Assembly (NCBI GenBank): GCA_051294905.1
Contig: CM119376.1
Coordinates: forward strand, 30,070,001 to 30,134,000
Source of the DNA: Botryllus schlosseri
Taxonomy: Eukaryota
DNA: 64,000 nucleotides
Direction of reading: 5' to 3'
Made by a program: the position numbers and the translations under genes
The notes under the pieces: generated by a model
Databases searched by the model: none
Seen by the model: only the letters and a program-made list of their open reading frames with translations
What the model was told of the DNA's origin: nothing
In this document: positions 330 through 35,193 of the stretch, in pieces
Numbering within the stretch: the stretch's first letter is position 1
How the letters are laid out: each line of letters opens with the position of its first letter

Positions 330-557
330 CTTCACATAGTTCATTTTCATACGGCGGTTGCCAAGCGCTCTCACTGTACGATATTCTTTGACAAGTTGAC
401 TTGAAAGACGTAGACGATTCTCGACCGGTAAATACATAATTTTCGATACATTTGTACGTGACCGTTGAGCCACGGAGAAGCAATCCTGATTCCTTGTTTC
501 CAATCACTTTGTACTGGGTAGATGGAAGGAATTCGGGGGGTGAAGTGCATTTGATAT
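330..557 (-). CDS. Gene 2 CCP exon, probably opening repeat unit 5
   Basis: 228-nt exon IKCTSPPEFLPST...YKCIENY...STCQRISYSESAWQPPYENELCE, then a G|gtgagc donor; the next exon is not in the window. Confidence 0.88.
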
Positions 558-3500
558 CTGGAAGTAAGAATTAGTCATAATAATGATCCTTACAGATCAA
601 TGAGTTCTTTGTGCTTCTACAAACTACTGGGTTTTCAAAATCAGCTTCTAGAACCAGAACTAGACCTTATAAATATTCAAAACTTACTACTAGAACCAGA
701 ACTACTCACTCTTACAATCCAGGTACTAGAATTAGGACCAGAACTAACGACATTCAAACCTAACCACAAAAATCACACCCCTGACTACGTCACTGTCAGT
801 AGCGATGCCTCCGGGCTGGCGATGGCTGCAAGAACATGGCAAAACTGAAAATTCACAATCACGCTAAACTGCTTGGCAGCTAAATATTTTTTTTAATGTG
901 CAACTACAACTGGAATACTCACTTTACTCCTCAAGCAGAACTAGAACTATAACTACTTGAAAGAGCAGTGATTGGATGAACGTCATCTAACTACATTAGT
1001 AGTTTGTACAGTGCACAGTACCATTTACTGATATTTGCGACAGGTGAGATGTTCATAAAACTCACCATTCTGACATCGATCTCCATTGAATCCTAACGCA
1101 CAGAGGCAGACGAAGTTTCGCAAACGATTGCGACAAGAACCGCCGTTCTTACATGGCCGAGACAGACAGAAGATATCTAAAAATATTTTGAAACGGCTCG
1201 CAAATGAATGAAAAAAAACGATGATCAGCAAAATAAATTCAACTCACGACACTCTGCCCGTTTCACTTGTATTTGCTTCAACGTTGCCCGTCCAGAGCCC
1301 AGAAATTCAAATTGGATATGACGAGGGAAAGGAATGTTCAAGAATGACACAAGATCAACATCTTTGTTCTCCAGTGGATGCGATGCCCATCCCTGGTGTC
1401 TTTTACCAGACTCGTCTCTAAATAAAACCATCAAATACAAATTTTTTGAAAAGTAAGTAGTTTCGCCCAAAAACTGGTCAAGTCGTAGTGTTTACACATA
1501 ACAATTTGAGCAAGTGGACAAAAGCTGCTTGAACACATGGAAATATTAGAGCTACAGTCGAATCCACTTAATTAGCACTCCGGATAACCCAAACAGTAGA
1601 GTTGTTAAAAATAACCTTTTTTTCGAATTCCAGGGTATCTCTAGTTAAATAGTTAGGTTGCCTAAAAAAACGTTGTACTTCAAATTTGGCTCAATTCAAA
1701 ATGCTAGGTGACAAGGTGCAAATTGTACTGCCTACTTGATGAAATCGTTAGGTTACCTAAAAATACTCTGCACACCAATTTTGGCTCAATTCCAACCTAT
1801 AGAGGCCTTGCTATAATAGAATAAAGTTTTGGATTTATTTAGGAAAAATAAATATAAATTTTTCGAATTTTACTCTCGACCCCACGAAATTGTTATGTTG
1901 TGTAAAAGAGCGATGCATAACAATTCTTTCTCACTTCCAACCTATAGAAGCATTGCTACAAGAGAAAAAAGCTGTGGATTTATATAATAGTAGTACTCAA
2001 GGTGGCCAATTCTCACACTAATTATTTTTATAGATCTACCCACCGTAAATACTATGATTGGAAATCCTAAATTTTGAACATTAATAACTTCGCTCCTACT
2101 AGTTGAAATTGAGCCAAATTTGTTGAGTATCTTTTTTTCAAGCAATTTAATCAGGTAGCCAATGAAATTTGAATAAAATTTATATGTAATTTTGTGAAAT
2201 AATTCCAAAACTTCTTCTTTTGTAGCAATGCTTCTATAGGTTGGAATTGAGCCAATATTGGTGTACGGAGTTTTTGTTAGACAACCTAACAATTATATCA
2301 TGTAGCCAGTAGCCTACAAATTGCAAAAAATATTAGTTATGAACAGCCCGAAGCAACACTGTGGCCTGAAACCTACAATGACAGTAAGCTAAGTGAACCC
2401 ACTCACATCTCTCGTAGTTGGAGACTGGACCCGTCATGAAGTTTGTATGCAAACACAACACATATATGTTCACCAGGCACATAATCGACATTTATCTTTG
2501 GGGAAGTAAGCACAGATGTAGGTCGAGTTGCAACTATTCCGCGATCTGTAAAATAACGCATTCATCTCACCATAAACTTGGGCAAAAAACTACAAAATGA
2601 AAAATAATACAGGAACAGGCAAAAGCCGAGAATTCTGATCAGGGATTTCAAGGAATCCCTGATTCTGATATTGGAAAAAATTTATTGGATGATGCTGTTT
2701 CTACAGCTTTTTGGAGGTACAGAACTTCAGTATACAATTGAGTAGTATATTGATATTAAAGGAACCCGAATATTTTCGGCTGATACTCGTCAGGGTTAAC
2801 CATCAGCAGCTAGTAGAGAATTCAAAAGAACATTGTATATCAGTGGTTCCCAACGTGGGCGATATCGCCCCCCAGGGGGCGATTTGGCGGTCTAGGGGGG
2901 CGATAGGGGGGCGATGACGCGTCAAAACGGCTGACCTTTTCTTTTTTAGTCAACCACCGGAAATCTAGTTACAAAAGTGTCAAATTAGACATCGAGCCGT
3001 AAAAGCTGACCTTTTTTTTGTTTTTTTTTCAGTCAACCCGCTGGCGATTACAGTTTGTACGCCCAATTTTCGGAACACAAAATTTGGGGGGCGAAGATCG
3101 GGGTTGAGCTTGAGAAGGGGGCGATGGGTCGAAAAAGGTTGGGAACCACTGTTATATATCAACAATCGTATCACAAATATGACGTCGGACGTCGCCTCAC
3201 CAGCATGAAATGTCGAATATGAGAGTGTTCAATCCAACAAGTGTTTGCCAAATGCAAAATTTATGGCCTTTGATTGTTCCGCATCAATCTTGAGCTCACC
3301 CTTGACTCATCCGCTCAAGATTGATGCTGAACAATCAAAGGCCATAAATTCTTGGCAAAAACTTGTTGGATAATCCCGCCTGTGCAAAAAAAATTATCGA
3401 GACGACAGATTTCGCGTACTCGAAAAGGGTCGTTCACACTTTCATTTGTATCGACTTTCATCAAAATACACCAGCCAAGGCTGTGTCAATACAGCGAGTT

Positions 3501-6500
3501 CGTGTATCATCAAAAAAGAGTACATTGTATTTGACATTTCATGCTGGTGACGTCATATTTTGTGATACGATTGTTGATATACGATGCTCGATTGAATTCT
3601 ACTAGTTGCTGACGATTACCCCTGACGAGTGTCAGTCGAAAATATTCGGGCTCATTTCAATATCAATATAGCGTTCAATAGCATATTGAAGCACCGTACA
3701 TCCAAGAAGCTCTTCAAATACAGGAATATTTTTAAAAAATACATCAATATTTTGAAAAGATTTTTCGTGTGAATTGTAAAAAAATGCACCACTTCAATGT
3801 ACATAGAACAAAGTCTATCCAGTTGCTTCAAAGTTTGTAATTTGAAAGGTGAATGTCATGCAGTGATGGCATGAGATGAGCATAAAATACTTACGTTGAT
3901 AATCCTCAAACCCCCACCCTACGTTAGTATATCCACATGTTTGTCGGCTAGAGTGTCGCGCCAACGAGCAGTTCAGATCGGCTGTTTGAAGACAATAAGA
4001 TCTCATTTTGTTCTAAAAAGCACTGCACTTTACCTACCTTCACATCTCACATTTTCAAACGATGGTATCCAAGCACTCGTGCTGTACGATGTATTTTGAC
4101 AAGTCGAATTGAAAGAAGTAAAGTATTCTTGACCAGATAATTTATAATTTTCGAAACATTTGTAAGTGACAGTTGAGCCGCGAAGAAGCAATTCTGATTC
4201 TGTATTTCCAATCGCTTTGTGTTCGCTGGATGGAAGGGTTGCAGGCGGCGAAGTGCATTTGATATCTGGAAATGAGAATAATTATAAGGATGGATAAACA
4301 CTAGGGTTGTTCAAAAATAACTTTTTTCCCGGATTCCGTAGATTCACTGATTAAATTATTAATTGGCCTATAAAAACGCTGCACGCCAAATTCGGCCTAA
4401 TTCCAACTGTTAGATGTCAATGGAAAGGAATTGGAGATTTTGAATTTATTATAAAAAAAAATTAATAATAAGAAAATTTTAAACTCTACTCCCAACCCCA
4501 TCAAATTGTTAAATTTTCTAAAGAAACGATGCTTGACAATTTTGTAGAACCTGTAGAAGCAAAGGTATTGCAGTTGCAAATTTTGGATTCATAAAAATAG
4601 CCTGGACGGCAGGTAATCCCAGAATTATTAATAATAAAACTCAAATACCTCTGCTTCTACGGGTTGAAATTGCATCAAATTTGTTTTGGATCGTTTTTGT
4701 ATACAATTCAACAATTTGATGGGGCCGACAGTAAAATTTGAAAAAAATTAAAATATTTATATGATAAAAAATTTTCAAACTCCGGTGCGTTCATCTCTAC
4801 CAGTTGGAATCGAGCTAAATTTGGTGCGCAGAATTCTATAGGTAAACTAATAATTTAATCAGTGAATCCACGAAATTTGGAATTTTTTTTATTTTTGAAC
4901 AACCTTAAGGGGACTAGCAAGTCAAGAAGCGTTTTTTTTCAAGTTCCCACCAAAAGATTACATGTTTCGTCCGATATATGGTTTGACCGTTAGAACATAT
5001 ATGTATGTATATTATCTCCGGGTACAAATTTGTTAGATTGTTGTCAGTTGTCATTCAAGCATTCTGGCACTCATTTTTATCATTAAATCGGTAACACTTG
5101 TTCATTGACTTTTTACTTTGCAAATGTTTGTAAGTGTTTTTCTCAATTATAAAATTTCATTACGTCGCATCACGGTAAACCCACAATTTGTATGATATAT
5201 TTGTCCTGAATGATTTTTTGAAAATATGACATTCAGACCTGTGGTATGCTAAACTTTTTTGACATAAGTCTACCGTGTCAAAAGTTACAGAACTGCAAGC
5301 AAACTTACAGCAAATTTATGACAAAAATTTGAATTTTCAATTTCAAAATGAAATTTCGCCTAGATGGGTATCACATAATCCTTCAAATTTTAGCATAGCC
5401 CAGCACTGTCCTTGTACTTCCTAATGAAGGTGCTAGATTGGAAAAAGGGCTTCACAATTTTGATATTTTGCATTCCCCGTATCGGTGCATTTTCTGTCCT
5501 TCAAATTTACAATATGCCACAATATACAGAGTAGAACTAATTTTTTTTGTATGCAGCATAGCGATTACTGGCTGATGTGCAAAATTTCATGGTGATGGGG
5601 ATAGCCATCCGCAAGTTGGGTTTTTGAGTTGCTAGTCCCCTTAATACACACTCAGGATTTGTTACTCGTGATAAAACATAGTAGGCTACCATTAAACAGG
5701 GTGTAACCAAGTCACAAGGTTCCGAGTCAAGAGACAATTTTACAGTCTGACTCGAGTCAAGTCATTTTCAATTAACCACTGAGTCAAGTCCGAGTCCAAG
5801 TCAGGGATCAACGGGTAGTGCCCAAATCATAGTGTTCACTGTTCATTATCGAATTGAACTCGGGTTCAGCTCACTTTTTTGAAACTATTGTGTGATGACA
5901 AAGTCTCGCATTCATATTATACTCATTTTTCTCACTCTTAACAAGTTTATTCAAACAAATGAAATGTTCTGGGCCTATTTTCAAGTATCAGACCTGACAC
6001 ATGACACTTGAATTCAAATCAAATAGGATACTTCGAGTCGTATGACTTGGTCTGGTAATGCGGAATGACTCGATTACAAGTCGAGTCAATACACGAAGTG
6101 ACTCAAATCGAGACGAGTCAGTTTCCATTTTTAAGAAAATGACTCGAGTCAAATCAAGTTAACGGGACATTGTGACTCGAGTTTGACTTACCATTCTGAC
6201 ATCGATCTCCGTTAAATCCCGGCGCACAGAAGCAGACGAAGTGTTCCAAACGATTGAGACAAGTGCCGCCGTTCATACATGGGTCAGGCAGACAGAAGTC
6301 ATCTGAAAAGATATCCAAATGGAGTATGGCTCAAAAATGAGTAAATCGATGATCTAAAAAATTTCAACCCACGACATTCAGTCCGTCTCACTTCTATTTC
6401 CTTCAAGAATACCGACCCAGAACCCAGAAATTCATATTTGGGACGACTGGAGATCTGGATGTTCAAGAAGGATTTACGATCAACTAATTTCTGCTCCTGT

Positions 6501-9500
6501 TGATGTGATGTCCATGTCGGGTATCTTCTACCAGACCCGTCTCTAAATACATCATAAGAATGTCCTTAGCTATTGATGATGTTACAGCAACTGCTATCGG
6601 GCTATATCGTTGTGCTAGAATCAAAGTAGCTTTACTCCATTTTTCAAATTTCTTGAAAATCAAGATTTTATAAGATTTTCATTTTTTCAGCCATATCTTG
6701 GCCATGATTATGCTTGTCAAATTGTTTCTCAATGCCAACCATGGTAAAGATACGAGTAAATTTTCCCAAAATGTGTAACATCATTAGGGCTGTGCAAAAA
6801 GATTTTTGATTTTAAAATTGTTCTGGCTACTTGATGAAATTGATAGGTTGCCTAAAAACGCTGCACACAAATTTTGGCACAATTCCAGCCTATAGTAGCA
6901 TTGCTATACAAAATAAAAGTTTTGGATTTATTGAATCAAAACATATCTGAAAATTTTTCAAATTTAGCGGCTAACCCACACAAATTGTTCAGTTATCTGA
7001 AAAAACAATGAGTAACAAATTTGGCTCAATTTTAAACAGTAGAAGCGAAGATAGTGGAGAAAAAAATTTTGAATGTAAAAAAATAATATTTACGGTGGAA
7101 AATTATTTATTATAGATCCACCCACGGTAAATATTCTGATTTGAAATCCTAAATTTTGTGATCCAATAACTTTGCTTCTACAGGTTGGAATTGAGCCAAC
7201 TTTGTTGCGCATTTGGGCAACCTAACAAATTCAAGGGGTAGAGAGTAAAATTTGAAAATCTTATATATTTCTTTTTATTAAATAAATCCAGAGTTTTTTT
7301 CTACATAACAATACTTCTATAGGTTGGAATTGAGCCAAAATTTGCGTACAGCGTTTTGTTAGGAAACCTAACAATTTTATCAAGTAGCCAGTAAAATTTG
7401 AAAAAAGCTATTTTTGAACAGCCCTAATCGACATAAGTAACTTTGATTTTACAGCGACGATATACGGAAAGCCAGTGACAAAAAATTTACATAGACACTG
7501 TTGGCATGCAGATTGCTCAGAGCCACAGGTAATGAAAGTAGTCAACGATTCTACTCTCAAGTAAATTTTTCTCAATTACAAGTAGAATAGCAATTTCAAA
7601 GGCATGTCAAAACTACTTCAAGTAGATGTAGAGAATGAAAGGTCTGAAAATTATTTCAGAAAAATAGATTTGGTCAAGTTAATCAGAGGAGGCTACGCTT
7701 GAGATTGCAGAATTCAATTCAATTTCAATTCAATTTAGTCTTCTTCAACAATTCATTGCACCACAAGACTGCCATACAACGAAAAAATAGGAAGGTGTCA
7801 AAGGAATGAAAAGTAAAAGAAGATAATATAAAAGGAAAGGCGACAAAATGAGGTGGCATGTGTCGGAAGGCGAGATCGATATGTCAGGTCGTGGTCCGGT
7901 AAAGTTGGGGGCTGACTAGTATTGATTCAGTAGAAATTGTTTGTATTTCGACTTGTATGTGGACAATTTGGACAGGCTCGAATACTGTCAGATAGCCGGC
8001 GAGTTACTGTTTCACACTGCAGTTCGGCATATTTGATAGAGCTTTGATCTTTTTTGTCTACCATATGGTAGTTGGACAACGTGGACACTCGTGTGTCGTA
8101 CTCATGCACTTTTGATAACGATGTAAAGAAGTCATTGAAGTTTTCGAGGTAGTCACCATATACTTGGCAATTTCTAGTTTCTGCATATCTTTTATGTGTA
8201 GGACACCGAATCTTTTGAGCAGTGATCTGTTGGACACACATCCAACCCACTTTGAGTAATTGTGCACTTTTGATACCGATAGACTTATCTTATTAAAGAA
8301 TCTGTTGAAGTTAGTTTACTGAAATTGAAAACTGCTGATTTTGAAATATTTACTGGAAATCTTGTTGTCTTGACTAAAAAAAGGTCATCATTAGGGCGAT
8401 TTCTTTTTGATCAGTCAAAATAATGTAAAAATTTTGTCAAAATCTTACCTTTAGGTCAAAAAATGTCAAACTTGTTTACAAAGTCCAAAAATTGTTGCAA
8501 CCTGCATTTCGTTTCTATCATAGATTTTGCACTGTCGGTGAACTTATCAGTTGACATTTTACATCTTGTAGCCTACTTCATAGGCCTACCGTTGAAGACG
8601 GCCCATTGTCTGCTCATTGTGAATCATAAACATTCAAATGAAACAAATTGGTTGACATGGTGTTATGCTCAACGTACAGCGATATCCTAACTGAAGCAAG
8701 ACTGCGTGGGTATTGCATGGTTCTTATATCAAGAAGCGCATCATGACAAATTGTGATGTAAACACCATTGTCAGAATGAAGCAACACGGTGTGTCACCTT
8801 CAGTGTTGTCAGGCAACAACTGCTACTGTTGAACGTTCTTTCTCTATTCTTGGCAAGCTACTTGGTAAGACACCCGAGAATGTGGGAAAGTATCTGTAGT
8901 TGTATACGTTGTACTACAACAAATTTTAATTATTTCTACCATAATATGTGGAGTAACTAATGGAATTCTTCATAGGGACAGATCTCGTTCAAATGAAGTT
9001 TTTCATGTAAAAATTTGTCAGTTTTTATGTCAAAAAAGTTTTTTCAGGCCAAACTACTTCGTAAGGACAGACAGTTCCTACCAGAAATGAAGATGAGTAC
9101 TGGTAGTACAATTCTAACATTATGTGGGTAAACAACTAATTTGCATATACATACGTTAGATCAAAATTTTGTCAAAAGTAAGATTTTTACAGTAAAAAAA
9201 TGTGAAAATTTTGATATTTTAGGTCAAAATCTTCCGTTTTTTAGGTAAAAAAAATGCCCTACTCATCACATTGGCTCGAATTCCTCATTACACGCTTTTT
9301 ACCGTGCTTCTATGGTGGTGACCAGGGCTTTGGAGCAGCCGTAAATTTAAACTGCTCCAGCTCCGGCTCCGGAGCTTTCTTCTATCATACACTAGCTCCG
9401 GCTCCAGCTCCGGAGCCGCATTATTACCACTGCTCCGGCTCCAGCTCTGGCTCTGAAATTATCGAATGGGTCTGTCTATATCAGGGGTGGCCAACCCGCG

Positions 9501-24500: not shown

Positions 24501-27500
24501 TTGAGCATCTTGCCAATGACGAAGACCATTCGGCTGAAGAGCCTGATTCATCACCTGCCTCACAGTATATCCTCAATGCGCCGTTCTTTGGCTCATGACC
24601 TGTACAAATGAAAACAGCATCATTGTCTAATAAGACAAACTTCAATCTAGAACAGCAGGATTGTAATGACTCGACCCGAGTCGCAATTTTTCGTTTACTC
24701 GACTTGATGTGAGTCATTTTCTTAAAAATGGTAAATGAAACGACTCGAGTCAATTTGTGTATCAACTTGTACTTGAGTCATTGAACACGACTTGACACAT
24801 TCAATATGACTTATTAAAGTCTCGTATATCAGAACTGACAATTGAAAAATTGGTCAAGAAAGTGTATTTTATCTGTTTGAATTAACATGCTTAGAGTGAG
24901 CAAAATGATTATACCATGAATCCTAGGCCTTCAATATCACCTAAGAGCTTCACAGGAGTGAGATGAACCTGACTTGAACTCGATACTGAGAAGTAAACAC
25001 TATGACTTGGACTCGAGTCTTAACATGATGACTTAGACTTGACCCGTTGCTCCCTATCTTGGAATCGGACATGGCTCGGTGGTGAATTGAAAGTGACTCA
25101 ACTTTACCCGAGTCAAAACTATAGAAGTCAAATTGACTTGTGACTCAGTTACAACCTGGCGAAAAGTGCTTTTCAACCTGTGTGATGGTACGCAATTGTG
25201 CCGATGAAAATTGTGCATATTATTTTATTTTATTACTTATATATTTAGCTTATTATAATTCAAAAAAACTTAAATACACCGGCTTCATGACTTCTGTCAT
25301 TTCGGCGCATTTCTAAAATATTGTAGGACAACACACTGTTAATGGAAGCTTTTACAATGTTTTAGTCTCGCATTAGACAGAGGGGAATAATATTTTGCAC
25401 AGTATTATTATTATTATTACATAATTAAAAACCTGGTTCGAAAGTAGGTATAAAGTCCTGGCACCGTGTCCTCTTACAAAATCCCATGACTTATTTGGTC
25501 GAAAAGAGCACTTGATGGCCAAATGCGGGGAGTTGAAGTGGTCTGGGATTGCATTTTGCATATGTAATAATTTTCGGTAGGTTTGTGCGGATCAGTTTTT
25601 TACAAAAATGAAAATTGTTAATGGTTCCTCTAAAAGGTTGAATAGCACTGCACTAGAATAATCAGGCTCGAAAGACTAAATGAGGAGTTCTGTGTACGCT
25701 TTCGAATTATCTGCATATATGGACTACCCATTAAAAGCAATGTTGCATAAAGCGTACTTAATTGAAAGGCAAAAAAACTATGTATTTCACCTTTCAAACC
25801 TTGCTGGCTTGCTGCCAATCCAGAAGTAAATCTACGGTATTCTTGGAAGGTTTTGGAATGGCACACACGTAAATGATGTTTAACATATAGTCCAGCACGA
25901 AATCTGTTCTTCACTGCGCATGTACGAAAACCTTGCTCGCAAGTCACAATGGTAAATGACTCTCCACACATTTTTTTACACTGCCGGATACGGCGCTCTC
26001 ATACTGGACCAGTCCCACAAACTATAACGTGCTTATCATTGTATAATGTACATGAGCCAAACACTGAAGATTGCAATAGCGCTAATCAAACATCATTCGT
26101 AGTAATCAGATGACACTGGTTCCGGTAGGAGATCCTACAGTAGGCCACGCAGTTACTCTCATAACGAGGCAGTTTAGTAGAGAAACAGAATTTCAATACT
26201 GTTGATGTGGGTGAGGCGAGTAAAAGTACACAGCGATGTACAGATGAGTTGAATCAATTGTAATTTGTAATTGAGTTGAATGTAATTAATTACATTTTTT
26301 CATGTAATTTTAATTGTAATTGAAGCATTTCTATTTTGTGTTATTGTAATTGTAATTTGAAGAAAATTTTTCCGAATTACAACTTCAATTACATTGTTAT
26401 TGAAACCTGACAATCACAACATAAAATGATTAGCCTATTTACATCGTTGCTCTATGCGTGCCTCGTTAACTAGATAATTCAGCAATGCTAAACTGTTTCT
26501 CATACTTGAGTAGCAACAGAAAACGTAGCGAATTAAAATATAGGCTATACCAGTGGTTCTTAAACTGGGGGCGTGTGATATGACGATAAGGCACGGAATA
26601 TTTCACCGTCATAAAGGGGCCGTGTCTAAAAAAGTTTTAAGAACCAGTGGGCTAAACTAAATCGTAATATTTCAAAAATGGATAAACAGCAAATAAACTC
26701 TTCTGGAACCTGTACTGAACCATTTCCTACACCACGGTCAGAGTTTTTTTTTTAAATCTCTGATCAGTACTGACGCTTGCTGCAACAATTGTAAAAAGAA
26801 ATTCAAGTTTTCAACCAAGGATTCATCAAACTTGATCACACATTTTTAGAGATTTATACCAATCTTAGTCAACTTTACTGGGGTCAGAAACTTTTCGCAC
26901 CCTAATGTTAATCAAATGCAATCTAACAGTTTTTGAGCAAGTGAAAATGTAAATGTGAACCAAAATTTTGTAATTCGTAGTGATCAGGAGCTTCTTTCCT
27001 TTTGCAATTATTTTAATTTTACACACCTTATCATTATCATCCTTATCGCTGACACCTAACCAATTACATTTCATTTGCTTTACTCAGCTTCGTGTATTCG
27101 TTTGATTACATTTCACTGCCTGTCTTGTAGCCTATTCGCTGATAGTTGTTGCTAGTCGCTCAAACTTTTGGTTGTTAATAGTCGCTTGAAAAAGTTTTCT
27201 GTGTTTATAGTTTTCACTACTCGTAATTAGGAATAGCTCGAATATGTACGCGTTTTTTTGATTAACGGGTATTCTACGTATCATCAATGAAACATGAATA
27301 GCTTGAGATTGTTGCTCATTACGTCGCTACTGTTGCCAAAGGGCACCTCTCTACCGATAACATGTTCAACAGTAATTGTAATTGTAATTAATTACATGTT
27401 TAACAGTAATTGTAATTTAATTGTAATTTGATATTTTTAGCATTGAGTGATTATAATTGTAATGTAATTGAAACATGCAAGGAAGTAATTGTAATTGAGC

Positions 27501-30500
27501 TGAATTAATGTAATTGATCCAACTCTGATCTACAGATGGTGATTTGAGCCCTAATAAATACTGGAGTTGTTAAGCTTCAATTTTTTTCTATCTTGTCGCA
27601 TAAACTTTAAAATCAATGTTGCAGAAAATTGTCATAGCACCAGAAAAATGTAGTGGCTGGCGTACCCCTGAAAGTTCTTTTGCGTACCCCACTTTCATAA
27701 CCCCAGGACTAAATTATAATGAACTTCTACTGTGCAGAAAATGATTTGAGTTGAATGTTTAGGAATAAGTAATGACAACTGAACAACTGAACATCATTCA
27801 TTTCAAAACAAGATATTTATTCATTACTGACGATTACCTTTGTTGCAGACAACCGTTGCGATGGATCCAAAGTAGTATTGTGACGTGTAAGTCACTCTTC
27901 CATTCAGTACTTCTGGGATGGGGTCACATATTTGCAGTTTACAAATGAACCTTCCGACCGACCATCGTCCAGATTCTTGACACCTGACTCGCATGGGCTC
28001 ATCATCATTATTGTAGTAACCTGAAGATATTCAAATGCTCATAAAATTTGAAATCACACCGAACCCGTCAACGAAATGCAAAACCTGTGCGGCATTGGTA
28101 CGTGACTTCGGCACCAACATTGTAAAGGGTGTCGCCCCCTAACAATGGGTAGGAGTTTCCAATATGATTTGGCCTTTGACATCCACCTGAACATAGTCAC
28201 AATTGTTCTCAATAAACAATCAATAAGTATATACATATTGAAGTAAACCGACTGAAACTCTTTGTATGATGTTTTAAGCTGTCTGCAGCAATTTTATGTT
28301 GCAACTTTTTTCTATTTTTCATGCAAACTTTTATCAAATATCGCGCAAAATGTTAAGAAGTGATTTAAAAAACACGCTATAAAACTATTTCTAGTATGGT
28401 TCTATTCTCTTTGATTTGCATAACAAAGAGCTAGGTGATGGATTAGCTGGATCTCAATATAATCTATGACTCAATGGCTTGCAAACTAAGCGCTACCTTA
28501 GCTAAGCGCGATCGTGCCCGAACTACATGTAAATAGATCGCTTGATTAACTCTCTGTTGTTTAAATTTGAGGTGGTTTTTCATTTCACGGACGACCTCCG
28601 ATGGGTCACGTTTTTCAGGCTATTGATGTTGTTCCAGTGGCCAACGATAAGTTTTGCTGCAATGCCTGGGATCAAATTTGTAGACCTAAGGGGTTTGGGG
28701 TGTGATATTTGACTTGTTTTGGGGGAGGGAAGGCCCGGATTATCGATTGCTGTTTTTGGCTTTTGGGGGAAAATTATTTACGCATTGCGGTATTTTCTAG
28801 CTCTATCCGGCAGAAATGTAATTTTCGGCAGTCTCGCCATATCGTCCATCAAATGGGAAAGTACTGAATTTGACGCCTCTACAGGATCTGACAGAGAAAC
28901 GCTGTCATGTATGTCAATGTATACATGATCGGTTGAATGGCGGAGAAAGAAACGGAACATGCAGACAACCTGGACGTTAGGTTACAAAAGGAAACGTTTA
29001 GAGCAGTGGTTCTCAACCTTTTTGGCCTCGCGGACCCCTTTTGGCAGTCACGGACCCTCGCAGACCCCCTCAAGTTTTAGTTCAATTTTAGCTCTATTTT
29101 GGTGCAACCTTCATCTGTCTTGTGCAAATATGAACTGTAGGCTTGTGATAAACAGCAAAATAATTGATTTTCTTGAAGATAACATCATACTATTTATGTA
29201 GAAATTGGTGGACTTTTATTATTTCAAAGCTAATTTTGCTGCTGTATTTCTTGAAGTACGTGGTCGTGTCTTGAAAATCCGCGTCTTCGTTTTGATATGA
29301 ACGAGGAGTGCCGAAAACCATTTCAGCAAAGATAGGTGGAGGCTAATGCAATATTAACACATAACGCTTCCGACGATACTTTTGGTGTGATCGCAACATT
29401 TATGGCACCAAAATGAAGAAACACATATTTTATGAACATATCACGTCCAGCATCTAGCGCAGGGACGGGCACCATACGGACCGCTGGCCGGATTCGGCCC
29501 GCGACGGCATTTTGATCGGCCCTGCAGAGAGTTTCTACCGTCAAAGTGAAATCCTAATCTAAAAGTATAGACAAATTTTATGCTCCAAAGAATGGATCCA
29601 AGTTTTCCAACCAGAGAAAGACTGTCATGAAACGACTTGTTCTGTTCTGGTTCACATATATATTTACGAGCAAACATTTTCGACCATGAACAATTGAACA
29701 TTAACAAGACAAGGCTACATGCCAATATAACTGATGATATGAATTTCAGGGTTGGAGCGTAATGCCTTTATAGCAACGAAACACTCCTTGTTCATCAAAA
29801 AATCAGCCTTGTCGATAGGGCATCCATAATAAGAATGCGCAAAATCTGATAGCCGAGCTTTAAGAGCAGGTATATCATTGTCCGATTTATGACGAGTGTA
29901 AGCCGAAAATATTCGGGTTCATTTCAATATGAATATACTATTCAATTGTATAATAAAGTTCTGTACCTCCAAGAAGTTGTTCCCTGCATTGGGACAAATT
30001 ATGGAAATACTTCGGAAATTTTTATTTCAAACGACTATTCACTAATTTGATGAGACTGTCAACTTCAAATCGAGAAGGTTTCGCAGACATTAAGTCACCC
30101 TGATTGACGTTACTATTCCCATACGGTATCTTAATTTTTTCCACAAACCCCAATAAAACGTCTATAAACAGCAATAAATTTGTATCAGCAGGTTATTGGA
30201 AAACTGGGAATGGAAATGAGTTTCCATACTACGATAGTCCATGTCAGACGATTATTATGATGATATGAGTCATGAGGTTTTAGCAGCTGTGGTGCGAAAC
30301 TGCCTCATGCTTTCTCAAATTAAAAAATATAATAATACTTAGGTTATCAACCTTTTTAAAAATTTAGAGGTCTCGCGGACCCCCGGTTGAGAACCGCTGC
30401 TTTAGAGTATCTCATAATAAATGCAACTTTTTACAGGAACTTTTGGTAAAATGAAGTGCAACTTTCTCACGATTTTAGTGCAAAAAACTTGCCCAGTAAT

Positions 30501-33500
30501 CATCAGTAACTAGTCGAGAATTGATAAGAACATTGCATATCGACAAGAGCATCACAAAATATGCGGTGTGCGTCACAAATAAAAATATGGGTGAAAATTA
30601 GGGCAAGTTTTTGAAACTTTTTTACAACTTCCGGCAGCTTGCTAAATACTCAGAAGTTATGTAGTATGGTGTTTTAAGCTGTTTGGAGAAATCTTATATC
30701 GGAAATTTTCATCATGTATTTCATGCAACTCTTCGCAACTTTTTCGATTTTTCATACAACTTATTGCAATTTTTTTCGATTTTTTGTGTAACTGTTTTAC
30801 TGGAAATATTTGGCATTATATCTATATAGATTGCTTGAATAATATTTCACAGTCGTTTAAATTTTTGGTCCTTTCTGATTTGACTTCACAGGGTCAATTT
30901 TTTCAGGCTATTAATTTTGTTGAAGTTGCCAACATTGAGTTTTGCTACAGTGCCTTGGATACGGAACGATTCGAGTATTTCATATCGTAAAAATTTCATG
31001 GAACTTGTTCAAAAATGCAACTGTTTAGTGTAACTTTTGTGAAAATTATATGCAGCTTTCCACGGATTTGACTGCAACAGAAACTTTCATCCTAGTGATA
31101 ATGCTGTTGAATGCACACATTGGATTCGTATTGAAAGTTGTCGGTTATATTTTACAACTATCGAGACATAGAACGTACCAGTACCAGGTTCGTAATTGGG
31201 CCACAGATGTTTTGGCAAGAGTGAAGAAAAACGAAAGACTTGCATTCGCTGTTTAACCCTTACACGGTACTCCACTCACGTTGACACTTCGGGGCTTCAG
31301 GATGCCATTTCTTATCAGCGCAGCATGTCCGTATGTAGTCGCCTTCCAACACAAATCCATCGTCGCATATGTATGACGCCGTGCTCTGCATGGTAACTCC
31401 ACTGACCGTCATTCTACCGTGTGCAATTTCTTCAGGTTCACCGCAAACAGCGTCTTCCGATAGTGTTGCAATCAATTTATGATTTCAAGCAGATTTGGAC
31501 AAATGGATAATCCTAGTTGCCTAATTAGACTAATCAGAACGAAACGCCAGTAATCTAAGTCTAACTTGAGAAATGTTTCTATGCTCCAATTTTAATCCTA
31601 ATTTCTGGTTTTCCCGAAAATGCTTCAGGAGAACTGTAACGTACGAAACAAGCCAAGCTTGGTGTGCAGACATTTGCCATTCCCATGCTTATGAGAATGA
31701 ATTTAACTTGATTTTTGTTGTATTTGTGTCAATTCGAAATTGAATTCAATTTCCAAGCTTTTGCGAATTCAGCAATTCTAATTCTAATCTAATTTGGAAA
31801 TGAAGACAATTTTCTAGTTGTCCAACCCTAAAAGAGAGTAGCCTACTGACCTGGATTGTAGCAACTCATCCCGCACCATCCATCGCAATTACACTTCTTG
31901 TTCGGAGCTTTGCAATCGGCATCGGTGATGCACGGTCTGCGGCATTTCCTGCCTTCTCCGATTCGATTAAGTCTTTTTCTGCATATCCGCGCATTGCCAA
32001 CTGCAAAATATTTCAATACTGTATTCATATTTAAATGAACCGGGATATTTTCAGAAATTATTCGGGTTCATTTCAACATGAACATACTGTTCGATTGTAT
32101 ATTGAAGTTATGTACCTCCAAGAAGCTCTGCAAAATATTTGCGTCTGATGGAAGCCGATTTGCAAAAATAGTCAGTGTTGGGAGCAAGTCACTACCTACG
32201 AGTCACAAATAATGTTGAGCAAATGCACATTTCGACTCGAGTCAAGTCAAGTCACTCAAATTTCAGGTATTGACTTGAAATTGACTCCAATATTTTGCTT
32301 CGAGTCACAAATCCGGGCTGTAATGACTCGAGTCGTGATTTTTTGGTGACTCGACTTGACTCGAGTCATTTTTTCAAATGCATAAAATGATTCGACTCGA
32401 GTCAATTCGTGTATTGACTCGACTTGTACTCGAGTCATTGTGCATGACTCGAACTAAGTCATATGACTCAAGACTAGGACTGCCAAGACAGGCATTTCAT
32501 TGTAACTTCGGAGAAGAGTTAAGTTACCACACATTGGTTTTTCCTCTATCAGTCCTGATACTTGGAAAATAGGGCTGGAAACTGTTAGTTCTGAGGGAAA
32601 ATTACGATAGTATAAATGCGTGTCATTCTATAACGCTCAAGCAAAGTTGAAAAAAGTTGCTTGAATTGGATTGAACTGAAAACTGAACAGTGAACTTAAT
32701 GACTTGGACTCGGACTCTACCCTCTAATCAATGACTTGGGCTTGACTCGGTGGTGAATTGAAAATGACTCGACTTAACTCGAGTCAAAACTATGAAAGTG
32801 AGATTGACTCATGACTTGGTTACAACCCTGTCACAAGCCAATCCAAATTTCTTAACCGGTGAGTCATGTTAAGTCATTTTTGCAAAGTGTCTCAGGTCTC
32901 AGGTCATTCCATGTGAAACAGATGACTCGAACCAAGTCGTGACTTGAATCATCCAAATACTGTGAAAAGCATATTTATATCTGATCAAAACGTTTCCACC
33001 AACACAATATTTGATTCCGATTCAAATTCACAATATCATGCCCCATCACCAACAATGTAATTTCAAGTTGATGAGGTCACAGCCCATACAATTAAATGAG
33101 TTTCAACCCGAAATCCAACCCACTGAGATCATAGAGTTTAGCAGCTCTACTTCTATGTGAGTCATACAATGCCCCCGTGAATCTGGGTTACAATGACTCG
33201 AGTCCAACGCGAAGGCGCGATTTTGTGGTGACTCGAGTCAATTTCTTAAAATACAGAAGTAACTCAACTTGACTTGAGTCAATTTGTGTATTGATCCGAC
33301 TTGTACTCGAGTCATTGCACGTGACTTGACCAAGTCATACGAGTCGAGACTCGGATGGCAAAGACATGCATTTCATTGTAACTTCGAAGAATAGTAAAGT
33401 TGCATAATATTTCGTAGTATCATTACCGGTACTTGAAAATATGGCAGGAAACAGCTAGCAATGCGGAAAATGAATATATTATGAATGCGAGGCATTCGAT

Positions 33501-34761
33501 ATCACCCTAGCAGAGTAATAACAAAGTGATTTGAACATAGCTTCGAAATTGAACAGTGAAGACTTGGAAACGAGTCTCAACACTGCGACTCGGAATCGAC
33601 TCCCTGGACCCTGACTTGACTCGTTGGTGAATTGAAAATGCCTCGACTCGAGTCACATCTATAAAGTGAGATTGACTCGTGACTTGGTTACAGCACTGCC
33701 TCGAAAATATATACTCAACTCGATATTTGTTACGCGATTCAGAATTAATAGTGATTCAATCTGTACGTCAATCATCTTGCAAAATGACATGACTTAAATC
33801 ATGCCTTACAATTTATTCGACTTGACTTGATGACTTGACTCGACTCGACCTGGCTCGAGTCATCTCCAGTGAATTGAATTGAGTGTTACTCTAGTCATTC
33901 CATGTTAATTTAAAAGGGTTCAATAATTTAGGAGCCATATTTGTATTCGCTAGATGGCGTATGCTTGACTTTTCTTGGTCTTGTCTAAGGGAGTATTCTA
34001 GAAATTGCTGTCATACGGTACTGTGTGTAACAATGGTAATCGGCCCACCGGACGTTCCCCACTGTATCTACCAGTCTTGTTGGGTCAATATCATATTCGT
34101 ACTACTACTTTGTCGTATTATAATTTTGGATTTGAAGAAATTTTTAACAATTGGGACTTCAAGCAATATTCTGCTACTACCGTAATTCAAGATCGCGTAT
34201 GTTTACCTTAGGAAGCTATAGGACTTTACGGCGCTGGCATTTTATAGGAATTTCAGTGACCTCAACATTGAGTCACCTTCAAAATTCAAGTGACATGACT
34301 TCAATCGAGTCAAAATGTGCAATATTTCTCGATAGGACTTGTGACTTGATCCTGACACTGGGTGATCGCCTATATCGTGTCAATGAGTGACATATTGAAA
34401 TATGGAAGTGCATTAGCAACTGCATACTAAAATTTGACCAATCCTGACTTTACTAAATCACTAACTGTAGCATTAGTAACAGAAAGTTATAATGTAACTA
34501 AGCCACAATTACATGAATTGAACTGCATCAGACAAATTCAAAACAGACACACAACAATTGTTTCCAAATCAGCTACATTTCCCATGACCCATAGATGATG
34601 ACTCAGTTAGTCAGTCGGCCATTTATTGGTATTTTTATCAATTCAAAAACACAAGTTTGTGATACAATGAAAAGGTACGAGGCCATTGAAACGACTTAGA
34701 GGAGTCTTTTACAGGTTACCTGTCGATGTCACAACGGATCATCCAGGCCTCAGAGATCACG

Positions 34762-34792
<31 letters not shown>

Positions 34793-35193
34793 AGGTCTGG
34801 AACAGCATATCATTTGTGACCTCTCAAACCCAATCATATACGAATTCTGCGATGTGCTGTAACTGGGGGTCATGTGAAACATGGCTGGTCGGTTTGCTTA
34901 ATTTGTAGGCTGTGATCCCACTTGAATAAGCTACTAGTTGAATTTGCTGGACGCCCGTTTGATTTGCTCGTAATCACATCGCCTAGGCTCCGGTGTGTGT
35001 CTGTTTTCAAAGACTACCCCAAGTCGTTCCGACACCCTCCTATCTTTTTTCATTGTATATCGATCTTGTGTTGTTTTTAAAGGGCGGAATTGTTTTTAAT
35101 AAACTGATACTGATATTGAGGTAATCTTCTTCGAAACTAACCTTTCAAGTACGCACACAAGACCAACGCCACGTACAGAATGATAAGTTTCAT
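330..35193 (-). CDS. Large secreted modular protein SP-WAP-(CCP)3-[CCP-MAM-EGF]x4-CCP..., 3'-incomplete; LEV-9/Hasp-like N-terminus
   Basis: Hand-spliced exons (minus): 35142-35193, 31851-32000, 31280-31453, 28085-28186, 27838-28020, 24501-24599, 24265-24444, 23630-23722, 22131-22263, 18944-19113, 18768-18878, 18446-18673, 18300-18389, 16794-16932, 14126-14295, 13945-14055, 12457-12684, 12311-12400, 11268-11409, 6373-6542, 6192-6302, 4038-4265, 3895-3981, 2407-2545, 1248-1417, 1066-1176, 330-557. All introns are GT-AG with matching phases. The total is 3889 nt open with no stop, and the last exon ends at a GTGAG donor, so the gene continues left of the window. Confidence 0.9.
1066..4265 (-). 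CDS. Gene 2 repeat unit 4: CCP-MAM(3 exons)-EGF
   Basis: Exons of 228, 87, 139, 170 and 111 nt at 4038-4265, 3895-3981, 2407-2545, 1248-1417 and 1066-1176, with the same phases as units 2 and 3. Confidence 0.9.
2841..3151. mobile_element. hAT-type MITE
   Basis: TIRs cagtggttcccaac / gttgggaaccactg; 8-bp TSD ttgtatat / ttatatat (7/8). Confidence 0.85.
4302..4906. mobile_element. About 600-bp TA-flanked MITE family; other copies at 6785-7426, 11476-12066, 40478-41099, partial copies near 1590-2350, 13000-13343, 14538-14950, 38795-39060, 54600-55076
   Basis: Ends TAGGG(T/C)TGTTCAAAAA ... TTTTTGAACA(A/G)CCCTA; shared internal motifs (gctgcacaccaaatttgg, cttctac..gttggaat). Confidence 0.8.
4909..5640. 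mobile_element. TTAA-flanked MITE, Kolobok-like
   Basis: Perfect 12-bp TIR GGGGACTAGCAA / TTGCTAGTCCCC with TTAA on both sides (4905-4908 and 5641-5644). Confidence 0.8.
6192..12684 (-). CDS. Gene 2 repeat unit 3: CCP-MAM(3 exons)-EGF
   Basis: Exons of 228, 90, 142, 170 and 111 nt at 12457-12684, 12311-12400, 11268-11409, 6373-6542 and 6192-6302; very close paralogue of unit 2. Confidence 0.9.
7715..8330 (-). mobile_element. 3'-truncated remnant of a CR1/L2-like LINE
   Basis: Minus translation NDFFTSLSKVHEYDTRVSTLSNYHMVDKKDQSSIKYA, homologous to 36235-36516; frameshifted, with a simple-repeat tail near 7715-7740. Confidence 0.75.
9323..10573. mobile_element. hAT-type MITE (GCTCCG-rich) carrying a nested second MITE
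   Basis: Perfect TIR CAGGGCTTTGGAGC / GCTCCAAAGCCCTG and perfect 8-bp TSD gtggtgac. Confidence 0.92.
9482..10167. mobile_element. Nested hAT-type MITE
   Basis: Ends caggggtggccaacc / ggttggtcattcctg; perfect 8-bp TSD gtctatat. Confidence 0.9.
13945..18673 (-). CDS. Gene 2 repeat unit 2: CCP-MAM(3 exons)-EGF
   Basis: Exons of 228, 90, 139, 170 and 111 nt: IKCGPPPV...YQCIEDY...STCQ...[105 protein letters not shown]. Confidence 0.9.
15153..16375. mobile_element. hAT-type MITE (ATCCCGGGAT-rich) with nested MITE at 15464-16198
   Basis: Ends tagcgttgggac / gtcccaacccta with perfect TSD tttaaaac; inner element cagtggttcctaacc / ggttgggaatcactg with TSD ctctttat / ctcttgat. Confidence 0.88.
17070..17604. 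mobile_element. hAT-type MITE
   Basis: Ends cagggttgggcaact / agtttcccgtccctg; perfect 8-bp TSD gcgtaaac. Confidence 0.88.
18768..23722 (-). CDS. Gene 2 MAM-like domain 1 (3 exons) + EGF 1
   Basis: VNCTF...TCGYSNQYW (23630-23722); SLLTSPHINEDYAIEGRLCAVFRY (22131-22263); WTAHP...KYQFRASIGVQLEFVKLRRSNC (18944-19113); [36 protein letters not shown] (18768-18878). Confidence 0.85.
19490..20400 (-). mobile_element. Degenerate Penelope-like retroelement 3' part (GIY-YIG endonuclease region)
   Basis: Minus-strand pieces with stops and frameshifts: KDVLLASQKTNVIYGFKCRCDCRYV ... IKEHIPH ... SSIGIHLLEN..CVANY...FSILAKGRNLFHLCVLES..ITMRQPSLCHQKEFVYRLKI. Confidence 0.8.
24265..31453 (-). CDS. Gene 2 CCP (sushi) domains 1-4 (five exons)
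   Basis: CGEPEEIAHG...YICDDGF.LEG...TCCADKKWHPEAPKC; CQRPNHIG...YQCRTGY...RCQESGRWSVGRFIC; CDPIPEVLNG...VVCNKGH...YCEAG...EWSSSLARC; CPPPLKPRNG...YSCEEGYEMEG...QCNEESEWGAIPDC. Each has the 4-Cys + Trp CCP pattern. Confidence 0.9.
26246..27529. mobile_element. MITE with TAATTG-rich subterminal arrays and a small nested hAT-type insert (about 26551-26650)
   Basis: Inverted ends gagttgaatcaattg / aattgatccaactctg; approximate TSD atgtacag / atctacag; tandem gtaatt repeats at both ends. Confidence 0.6.
29004..30399. mobile_element. hAT-type MITE, composite
   Basis: Ends cagtggttctcaacc / ggttgagaaccgctg; TSD gtttagag / ctttagag (7/8). Confidence 0.8.
31851..32000 (-). CDS. Gene 2 WAP (four-disulfide core)-like exon
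   Basis: ICRKRLNRIGEGRKCRRPCITDADCKAPNKKCNCDGWCGMSCYNP has 8 Cys; cag acceptor and gtcag donor, 150 nt, phase 1-1. Confidence 0.88.
34762..34789. repeat. (CT)n microsatellite; others include (TA)n near 14697-14719, poly-C/(CA)n near 35919-35950 and (CT)n near 54236-54258
   Basis: Read directly from the sequence. Confidence 0.95.
35142..35193 (-). CDS. Gene 2 exon 1: start codon and signal peptide
   Basis: MKLIILYVALVLCAYLK followed by a G|gttagt donor (phase 1), joining the WAP exon to give ...LKVGNA-RIC. Confidence 0.85.

What the first reader, a model, noticed from the sequence alone, without database searches (positions are those of the whole stretch)
330..35193. Unfamiliar giant secreted protein: WAP-(CCP)3-[CCP-MAM-EGF]x4+
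Seen: ORF fragments that look like separate paralogues splice into one open frame of about 1296 codons: signal peptide, 8-Cys WAP domain, three CCPs, four CCP-MAM-EGF units (about 246 aa each for units 2-4) and another CCP, with no stop or transmembrane segment yet. Knowledge: WAP+CCP occurs in C. elegans LEV-9 and Drosophila Hasp; MAM repeats occur with LDLa (MALRD1/apical endosomal glycoprotein) or Ig/FN3 (MDGA, PTPRM). Inference: I do not recognise a strictly repeated CCP-MAM-EGF trimer behind a WAP head, so this may be an undescribed extracellular scaffold or recognition protein.
Basis: partly seen in the sequence, partly recalled or inferred. Interest (0 to 1): 0.9.

Follow-up and report, generated by a model that had tools for sequence, protein, structure and literature searches.

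The report
Secreted WAP–CCP–(CCP/MAM-like/EGF) repeat protein gene
The scattered ORF pieces are exons of one real, weakly expressed animal gene for a large secreted "beads-on-a-string" protein built by duplicating a five-exon cassette; it is a lineage-specific mosaic of common extracellular modules, and the module called MAM could not be confirmed.

Summary
The splicing claim holds exactly. On the minus strand, 27 exons (35193 to 330) join through 26 GT-AG introns into 1296 codons with no stop. RNA contigs from the same species show all six junctions in the 6 kb I could test, including head to unit A and the EGF of unit A to the CCP of unit B. So the units are not separate genes.

Pfam on single exons confirms Sushi/CCP and EGF, and WAP only just (21.0 bits against a cut-off of 20.8; elafin is the best solved match). 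The 133-135 aa module called MAM is not confirmed. No exon hits Pfam, solved MAM chains, 1.84 billion representative proteins or the ESM Atlas. It keeps MAM-like motifs and four cysteines in the right order but is about 30 aa too short. The spliced module could not be handed to Pfam or AlphaFold.

Units B and C are a recent tandem duplicate (83% identical, dN/dS 0.56). The C-terminus lies left of the window.

Most likely this is a lineage-specific secreted scaffold or adhesion protein with a LEV-9/Hasp-like head. The function is inferred only. Two other first-stage notes of this scan cover the same stretch. Interest is moderate.

The parts
35142..35193 (-). Exon 1: ATG and signal peptide (17 codons + 1 nt)
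   Evidence: donor GT, phase 1; only hydrophobic segment of the model; in-frame stop 12 codons upstream. No RNA test.
31851..32000 (-). Exon 2: WAP four-disulfide-core domain (8 Cys)
   Evidence: Pfam WAP 21.0 bits (cut-off 20.8); the only PDB hits are elafin (E 0.14). RNA-type runs of three studies hold 7-18% of the words of 31280-32000.
31280..31453 (-). Exon 3: CCP1
   Evidence: Sushi 46.6 bits, full length. AG/GT, phase 1-1.
28085..28186 (-). Exon 4: CCP2, first half
   Evidence: AG/GT, phase 1-1; a 64-nt intron follows. No Pfham hit alone.
27838..28020 (-). Exon 5: CCP2 second half + CCP3 first half
   Evidence: Sushi 27.1 bits, 2 stretches. X1 contig record 5 has 121 nt lying upstream of 24599, outside the laid stretch; the previous exon is the likely source.
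24501..24599 (-). Exon 6: CCP3 second half
   Evidence: joint 24501|24444 in an X1 contig and 7 raw reads of X6.
24265..24444 (-). Unit A exon 1: CCP (4th consecutive CCP)
   Evidence: Sushi 34.8 bits; joints on both sides seen in RNA. The signal-peptide-like ORF just upstream (about 24450-24487) is the 56-nt T-rich intron.
23630..23722 (-). Unit A exon 2: MAM-like module, part 1
   Evidence: joints 24265|23722 and 23630|22263 (X1, X2). No Pfam hit.
22131..22263 (-). Unit A exon 3: MAM-like part 2 (ends in phase 2)
   Evidence: joint 22131|19113 (X1); alternative donor at 22173 (-42 nt, in frame) in one contig.
18944..19113 (-). Unit A exon 4: MAM-like part 3
   Evidence: joint 18944|18878 (X1; X2 with one extra letter).
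18768..18878 (-). Unit A exon 5: EGF
   Evidence: EGF 45.3 bits; joint 18768|18673 to the CCP of unit B (X2 contig, side 74).
18446..18673 (-). Unit B exon 1: CCP (divergent, with insertion)
   Evidence: Sushi 23.5 bits; joined to the EGF of unit A in RNA.
18300..18389 (-). Unit B exon 2: MAM-like part 1
   Evidence: AG/GT, phase 1-1, 56-nt intron before it. C-x-F...C-G-Y motif.
16794..16932 (-). Unit B exon 3: MAM-like part 2
   Evidence: S-x-L-T-S-P and C-V-x-F-x-Y-x3-G motifs.
14126..14295 (-). Unit B exon 4: MAM-like part 3
   Evidence: 82% identical to unit C.
13945..14055 (-). Unit B exon 5: EGF
   Evidence: EGF 43.9 bits.
12457..12684 (-). Unit C exon 1: CCP
   Evidence: 92.5% nt identity to the CCP of unit B.
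12311..12400 (-). Unit C exon 2: MAM-like part 1
11268..11409 (-). Unit C exon 3: MAM-like part 2
6373..6542 (-). Unit C exon 4: MAM-like part 3
6192..6302 (-). Unit C exon 5: EGF
   Evidence: 96.4% nt identity to the EGF of unit B.
4038..4265 (-). Unit D exon 1: CCP
   Evidence: Sushi 20.8 bits (cut-off 20.7).
3895..3981 (-). Unit D exon 2: MAM-like part 1
2407..2545 (-). Unit D exon 3: MAM-like part 2
1248..1417 (-). Unit D exon 4: MAM-like part 3
1066..1176 (-). Unit D exon 5: EGF
   Evidence: EGF 34.7 bits.
330..557 (-). Last exon in the window: CCP of a fifth unit; donor GT at 329-328, frame still open
   Evidence: 63-68% identical to the unit CCPs. No Pfam hit at E<=0.01. Downstream 1-329 is intron-like, with a MITE and no MAM-like exon.

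Best explanation
This is one protein-coding gene of an invertebrate animal (species hidden by the tools), on the minus strand. It has at least 27 small exons, nearly all in phase 1, and runs off the left edge of the window.

The product is a large secreted, cysteine-rich 'beads-on-a-string' glycoprotein. Its order is: signal peptide, one WAP domain, four consecutive CCP/Sushi domains, then alternating MAM-like module - EGF - CCP. Written as cassettes this is four CCP / MAM-like / EGF units plus a fifth CCP.

Shown here:
- The gene grew by tandem duplication of a symmetrical five-exon cassette of 687-741 nt, always a multiple of 3.
- The B/C pair is recent (dS 0.17) and still under purifying constraint (dN/dS about 0.56).

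Inferred, not shown:
- The protein acts outside the cell as an elongated scaffold or adhesion molecule.
- The WAP + CCP head binds partners in the way of the LEV-9/Hasp synaptic-cleft scaffolds.
- The MAM-like beta-rich modules, spaced by rigid EGF and CCP modules, give repeated self-association or ligand-binding sites, as true MAM domains do in meprins and receptor phosphatases.

The confidence of 0.6 is for the whole statement. The gene structure alone is about 0.9; the scaffold/adhesion function is about 0.4.
For: - Splice model with 26/26 GT-AG introns and 1296 open codons.
- RNA junctions across CCP3 -> unit A -> CCP of unit B, including the 56-nt intron that mimics a signal peptide.
- RNA-type runs of several studies hold words of the WAP/CCP1 exons.
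- Pfam Sushi, EGF and WAP on exons; elafin as the only solved match of the WAP exon.
- A single N-terminal hydrophobic segment and no transmembrane segment.
- Unit identities of 83% (B/C), about 60% (B or C against D) and 34-42% (A against the rest), with dN/dS 0.5-0.6.
- Homology between B and C runs through introns, and only the exons are conserved between B and D.
- LEV-9 and Hasp are WAP followed by CCP arrays, secreted, and cluster acetylcholine receptors (PMC9083331).
Against: - Nothing here bears on function: no tissue, partner or phenotype.
- Expression is very low in the bulk RNA-seq sampled: 7 junction reads in 12.9 million reads of X6 and none in X10.
- The MAM-like module is not recognised by any profile at exon level.
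- The junctions SP->WAP...CCP3 and B->C->D->E rest on splice-site logic only.
- The C-terminus is unknown, so a membrane anchor cannot be excluded.
- LEV-9/Hasp contain only CCPs after the WAP. Orthology of the head was not testable.
Confidence: 0.6

Rival explanations
1. The units are separate small paralogous genes (CCP / MAM-like / EGF each), or the array holds pseudo-exons. On this reading the single 1296-codon frame is an artefact of choosing compatible splice sites.
For: An ORF at 24203-24529 starts with a signal-peptide-like stretch just before the CCP of unit A. The junctions B->C, C->D and D->E have no RNA evidence.
Against: That 'signal peptide' is a 56-nt intron that is spliced out in an RNA contig and in 7 raw reads. 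The EGF of unit A is joined to the CCP of unit B in RNA. No unit has its own ATG with a hydrophobic leader or a stop. All cassettes are phase 1-1 and multiples of 3. dN/dS is below 1.
Confidence: 0.04
2. Same gene, but the middle module is not a MAM domain. It is either an unclassified, lineage-specific cysteine-containing beta module, or a MAM so reduced that it is a family of its own.
For: No Pfam hit on any of its 12 exons at E<=10. No MAM chain among solved structures with exon profiles. Nothing real in 1.84 billion representatives. It is 133-135 aa against about 160-170 for MAM. The recalled PROSITE signature is not matched in full. RNA shows no missing exon in unit A, and there is no further conserved exon between B and D.
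Against: The hallmark motifs occur in the MAM order, with 4 Cys: C-x-F...C-G-Y, S-x-L-T-S-P, C-V-x-F-x-Y-x3-G and a terminal Cys. Each motif is 50-100 times more frequent than in shuffles. Pieces of 30-57 aa are too short for a fair profile test.
Confidence: 0.3
3. Same gene, but its role is innate-immune recognition or regulation rather than scaffolding. On this reading the CCP arrays work as in complement regulators, the WAP as in antimicrobial or antiprotease proteins, and the cassette is fast-evolving and recently duplicated.
For: Recent cassette duplication and fairly high dN/dS, 0.65 in the MAM-like part. Other first-stage notes report many CCP, WAP and complement-like mosaic genes in this genome (unchecked).
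Against: dN/dS is below 1 everywhere, with no sign of diversifying selection. There are no expression data after immune challenge. The neighbouring gene is an Ig/FN3 adhesion-type gene, which says little either way.
Confidence: 0.25
4. Not every cassette is in every mRNA. Because each five-exon unit is symmetrical (phase 1-1, length divisible by 3), the units could be alternatively skipped to give isoforms with different numbers of units.
For: Cassette lengths of 687, 738, 741 and 735 nt. An alternative in-frame donor inside the second MAM-like exon of unit A was seen once.
Against: No skipping joint was seen in the 6 kb tested. The coverage there was only a few contigs.
Confidence: 0.2

Closest known systems
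LEV-9 (C. elegans) and Hasp (Drosophila), secreted synaptic-cleft scaffolds
   Same: Signal peptide, a single N-terminal WAP domain followed directly by tandem CCP domains, and secretion (PMC9083331). Here the order is WAP plus four consecutive CCPs.
   Different: LEV-9 and Hasp carry only CCPs after the WAP (8, and up to 17). This gene interleaves MAM-like and EGF modules. Sequence orthology was not tested.
   Same: A beta-rich adhesion-type module repeated many times in alternation with small cysteine-rich modules.
   Different: The partner modules here are CCP and EGF, not LDLa. The module here is about 30 aa shorter and is not recognised by the Pfam MAM model at exon level.
Nephronectin / EGFL6 (MAEG) and meprins; from my own knowledge
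   Same: EGF and MAM occur in one extracellular protein.
   Different: Those proteins have one MAM, no CCP, no WAP and no repeated trimer. Meprins are also proteases.
CSMD1-3 and SEZ6 (alternating CUB-Sushi units)
   Same: A giant extracellular protein made of a strictly alternating cassette that includes Sushi. These are neuronal proteins discussed together with LEV-9 (PMC9083331).
   Different: The cassette partner is CUB, not MAM-like + EGF. They are membrane-anchored and have no WAP.

Membership tests
LEV-9 / Hasp type (WAP + CCP scaffold) | Signal peptide and one N-terminal WAP domain | tested here: met
   (signal peptide). WAP 21.0 bits against a cut-off of 20.8, 8 Cys; elafin as best solved match. 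The support is borderline but consistent.
LEV-9 / Hasp type (WAP + CCP scaffold) | WAP followed directly by tandem CCP domains | tested here: met
   CCP1-3 plus the CCP of unit A make four consecutive Sushi domains.
LEV-9 / Hasp type (WAP + CCP scaffold) | Rest of the protein made of CCPs only | tested here: not met
   MAM-like and EGF modules alternate with CCPs from residue 314 onward.
LEV-9 / Hasp type (WAP + CCP scaffold) | Sequence orthology (reciprocal best match) and a synaptic receptor-clustering function | not testable with these tools
MAM domain (Pfam PF00629) | Match to the family profile at or above the gathering score | tested here: inconclusive
   All 12 exons gave 0 families at E<=1 or E<=10. 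The pieces are only 28-57 aa, and the whole spliced module could not be submitted.
MAM domain (Pfam PF00629) | About 160-170 residues with four conserved cysteines (from my own knowledge) | tested here: not met
   Four Cys are present in the expected order, but the module is 133-135 aa. RNA shows no missing exon in unit A.
MAM domain (Pfam PF00629) | PROSITE MAM signature (pattern recalled from memory, so a lead only) | tested here: not met
   The full pattern gave 0 matches. The core C-[LIVM]-x-F-x-[LIVMFY]-x3-[GSC] matched in unit B only. The N-terminal C...CG[WYF] matched in B, C and D. [STA]-x-L-x-S-P matched in all four units.
Sushi/CCP (PF00084) | Profile match above the gathering score | tested here: met
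   46.6, 27.1, 34.8, 23.5 and 20.8 bits. The CCP at 557-330 is below E 0.01 but 63-68% identical to the unit CCPs.
EGF (PF00008) | Profile match above the gathering score | tested here: met
   43.9, 45.3 and 34.7 bits. The EGF of unit C is 96% identical in nt to that of unit B.

The most novel reading that the evidence does not exclude
The 133-135 aa three-exon module is a previously unclassified domain family: a 'mini-MAM' that lost about 30 residues yet still folds. The gene would then be a deuterostome-lineage counterpart of the LEV-9/Hasp synaptic-cleft scaffolds, with added self-associating modules. That would give a new handle on how extracellular scaffolds cluster neurotransmitter receptors outside nematodes and flies.
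Probability: 0.12. Interest if true: 0.7.

Novelty: new variant of a known kind. Interest (0 to 1): 0.4.

Why it matters
If the architecture is truly unannotated, it adds a clean, RNA-supported example of how phase-1 exon cassettes build giant extracellular proteins, with a datable recent duplication.

It also flags a short MAM-like module that current profiles miss at exon level.

The WAP + CCP head is the only link to a known function, synaptic receptor clustering by LEV-9/Hasp. That link would be worth testing by expression mapping.

Without such data it remains one of many lineage-specific mosaic proteins.

Tried and rejected
- Pfam on each MAM-like exon at E<=1 and E<=10 gave nothing.
- Profiles of the four copies of each MAM-like exon against all solved-structure sequences gave only chance hits: a phage repressor, ribosomal protein S10 and TCR alpha.
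- A profile of MAM-like exon 3 against 1.84 billion representative proteins gave two hits. Both are unrelated repeat proteins matched over 14-21 positions.
- The search for homologous proteins with the 107-aa open stretch around the last CCP gave no hit. Its length filter excludes full-length relatives, so this is a weak negative.
- The ESM Atlas on MAM-like exons 2 and 3 gave noise, with scores of 0.59-0.63.
- Rfam on the whole window gave nothing.
- Literature searches for the domain combination found no family with this architecture.
- A look for local HMM libraries in the sandbox found none.
- Rejected: the signal-peptide-like ORF at 24450-24487 as a second gene start. It is a spliced-out intron.
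- Left out: Pfam, HHpred-type and AlphaFold runs on the spliced module or the whole protein.
Full report
**Observation.** The window has about 39% G+C and no assembly gaps. On the minus strand, between 35193 and 330, short stop-free segments recur in a fixed order. Their translations look like CCP, a Cys-containing module, and EGF.

I set the exon borders by eye on the sequence and checked them by script:
- There are 27 exons of 52-228 nt.
- All 26 introns are GT-AG and measure 56-4725 nt.
- Every junction is in phase 1, except the one inside the middle module (part 2 to part 3), which is in phase 2.
- The joined frame is 3889 nt, which is 1296 codons with no stop, and it ends open at the donor at 330/329.

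Unit sizes are 229, 246, 247 and 245 codons. The ATG at 35193 follows an in-frame stop 12 codons upstream. Residues 1-19 are the only hydrophobic stretch of the model, so there is a signal peptide and no transmembrane segment so far.

**RNA evidence.** Runs labelled with the same species were found. Four of them were laid on 18600-24599. This stretch was chosen because it holds the link from the head to the array, the unique unit A, and the first unit-to-unit link. Every predicted junction in it is seen:

| Junction | Exons joined | Support |
|---|---|---|
| 24501\|24444 | CCP3 to CCP of unit A | X1 contig and 7 raw reads of X6 |
| 24265\|23722 | CCP of A to MAM-like part 1 | X1, X2 |
| 23630\|22263 | MAM-like part 1 to part 2 | X1, X2 |
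| 22131\|19113 | MAM-like part 2 to part 3 | X1 |
| 18944\|18878 | MAM-like part 3 to EGF of A | X1, X2 |
| 18768\|18673 | EGF of A to CCP of B | X2, 74 nt on the short side |

- One 567-nt contig runs from upstream of 24599 (probably the CCP2/3 exon), through CCP3 and the CCP of unit A, into the first two MAM-like exons.
- The ORF that looks like a fresh signal peptide in front of unit A is therefore a T-rich 56-nt intron. The 'separate paralogues' reading fails at the two places where it could be tested.
- The contigs are 95-99% identical to the window, which fits a polymorphic species.
- Expression is low in the two bulk runs sampled.
- RNA-type runs from three further studies hold 7-18% of the sampled words of the WAP/CCP1 stretch.
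- The junctions SP->WAP->CCP1->CCP2->CCP3 and B->C->D->E rest on splice logic alone.

**Domains.** Because the tools take no spliced sequence by reference, each exon was scanned on its own.
- Sushi is found for CCP1 (46.6 bits), CCP2/3 (27.1), and the CCPs of units A (34.8), B (23.5) and D (20.8).
- EGF is found for units B, A and D (43.9, 45.3 and 34.7 bits).
- WAP scores 21.0 bits against a cut-off of 20.8.
- The WAP exon's only solved-structure matches are elafin (E 0.14), and it has eight cysteines.
- The last CCP (557-330) has no Pfam hit at E<=0.01 but is 63-68% identical to the unit CCPs.

**The middle module.** It is three exons of about 30, 46 and 57 codons, 133-135 aa in all. No tool confirms the MAM label:
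- Pfam finds nothing for any of the 12 exons, even at E<=10.
- Profiles of the four copies of each exon find no MAM chain among 177,635 solved-structure sequences.
- The exon-3 profile finds only two unrelated repeat proteins among 1.84 billion representatives.
- The ESM Atlas gives noise.

What does speak for a MAM origin is the order of short motifs and four cysteines:
- C-x-F...C-G-Y at the start;
- S-x-L-T-S-P;
- C-V-x-F-x-Y-x3-G;
- a terminal Cys.

Each motif is 50-100 times more frequent than in shuffles. However, the full PROSITE pattern as I recall it is not matched, and the module is about 30 aa short of a normal MAM. The missing part is not a missed exon. RNA joins the three exons of unit A directly, and between units B and D only the five known exons are conserved. 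I therefore call it 'MAM-like' and leave its fold open.

**History.** Unit identities are as follows:

| Pair | Protein identity |
|---|---|
| B vs C | 83% (81-96% in nt per exon) |
| B or C vs D | about 60% |
| A vs the others | 34-42% |

B/C homology continues through introns: a 1.57-kb block, 14951-13406 against 7173-5643, is 85% identical. This is a recent tandem duplication of the whole five-exon cassette, as another first-stage note proposed (s1-236870). For B/C, dS is 0.17 and dN/dS is 0.56. dN/dS is 0.5-0.6 for the older pairs and about 0.65 in the MAM-like part. The copies are coding and constrained, but not strongly. Every cassette is phase 1-1 and a multiple of 3, so units could be gained, lost or skipped without breaking the frame.

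**What it most likely is and does.**

Shown here:
- It is a single gene for a secreted, cysteine-rich modular protein.
- The order is WAP, four CCPs, then MAM-like-EGF-CCP repeated.
- At least 1296 residues are encoded, and the C-terminus lies outside the window. Positions 1-329 are intron-like with a MITE.

Inferred:
- It is an extracellular scaffold or adhesion protein.
- The head has the same order as LEV-9 (WAP + 8 CCP) and Hasp (WAP + up to 17 CCP). Those are secreted proteins that cluster acetylcholine receptors in the synaptic cleft (PMC9083331).
- The repeated MAM-like modules could give multivalent self-association or ligand binding, as true MAM domains do. That last point is from my own knowledge.

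An innate-immune recognition role is a serious rival, given the CCP and WAP content and the recent duplication. No data here separate the two readings.

**Comparison and novelty.**
- It is not a member of the LEV-9/Hasp type in the strict sense, because the body is not CCP-only.
- Membership of the MAM family is unproven.
- I found no described family with this cassette in the literature searches.
- I could not run a domain-architecture or full-length homology search, and the empty exon-level searches are weak negatives.
- Other first-stage notes, all unchecked, suggest that this genome is full of unusual mosaic extracellular genes. This lowers the surprise.

I rate it a new variant of a known kind (phase-1 mosaic extracellular proteins), with interest 0.4.

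Noticed in passing
window 22131-22263 (alternative donor at 22173): One RNA contig (X1, depth 3.7, 29 nt on the short side) joins 22173 to 19113. It uses a GT inside the second MAM-like exon of unit A and removes 42 nt (14 codons) in frame. This may be a minor isoform or an assembly artefact.
   Followed up: partly
window 19193-19235 (intron of unit A): About 40 nt are shared with a very abundant RNA. 2378 reads of X6 and 965 of X10 lie on it only partly, with loose ends on both sides and on both strands. It is probably a fragment of a highly expressed repeat or transcript from elsewhere.
   Followed up: no
window about 41100-55450, minus strand: Exons of an Ig I-set / fibronectin-III adhesion-type gene lie upstream on the same strand (Pfam I-set 30.5 and 25.5 bits, fn3 17.4 bits). 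Another first-stage note calls it a contactin. Its 3' end and the gap to exon 1 of the present gene were not mapped.
   Followed up: partly
introns, e.g. 32259-32453, 24466-24777, 17524-17865, 33241-33372, 13880-13910, 160-257: There are many copies of short palindromic MITE-like elements containing GACTCGAGTC. They give repeated pseudo-ORFs and account for high contig depths in the RNA-type runs at 21000-21200, 22000-22200 and 23800-24200.
   Followed up: no
window 7930-8289 (-), 10677-10961 (-), 36235-36516 (+): Three related ORF fragments share a conserved tail motif. They look like remains of one transposable-element family, two of them inside introns of this gene.
   Followed up: no
window 14951-13406 vs 7173-5643: A 1.57-kb block is 85% identical between units B and C and spans MAM-like exon 3, the EGF exon and the following intron. 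The EGF exons themselves are 96% identical. That is higher than the rest of the cassette, which could mean gene conversion after the duplication.
   Followed up: partly
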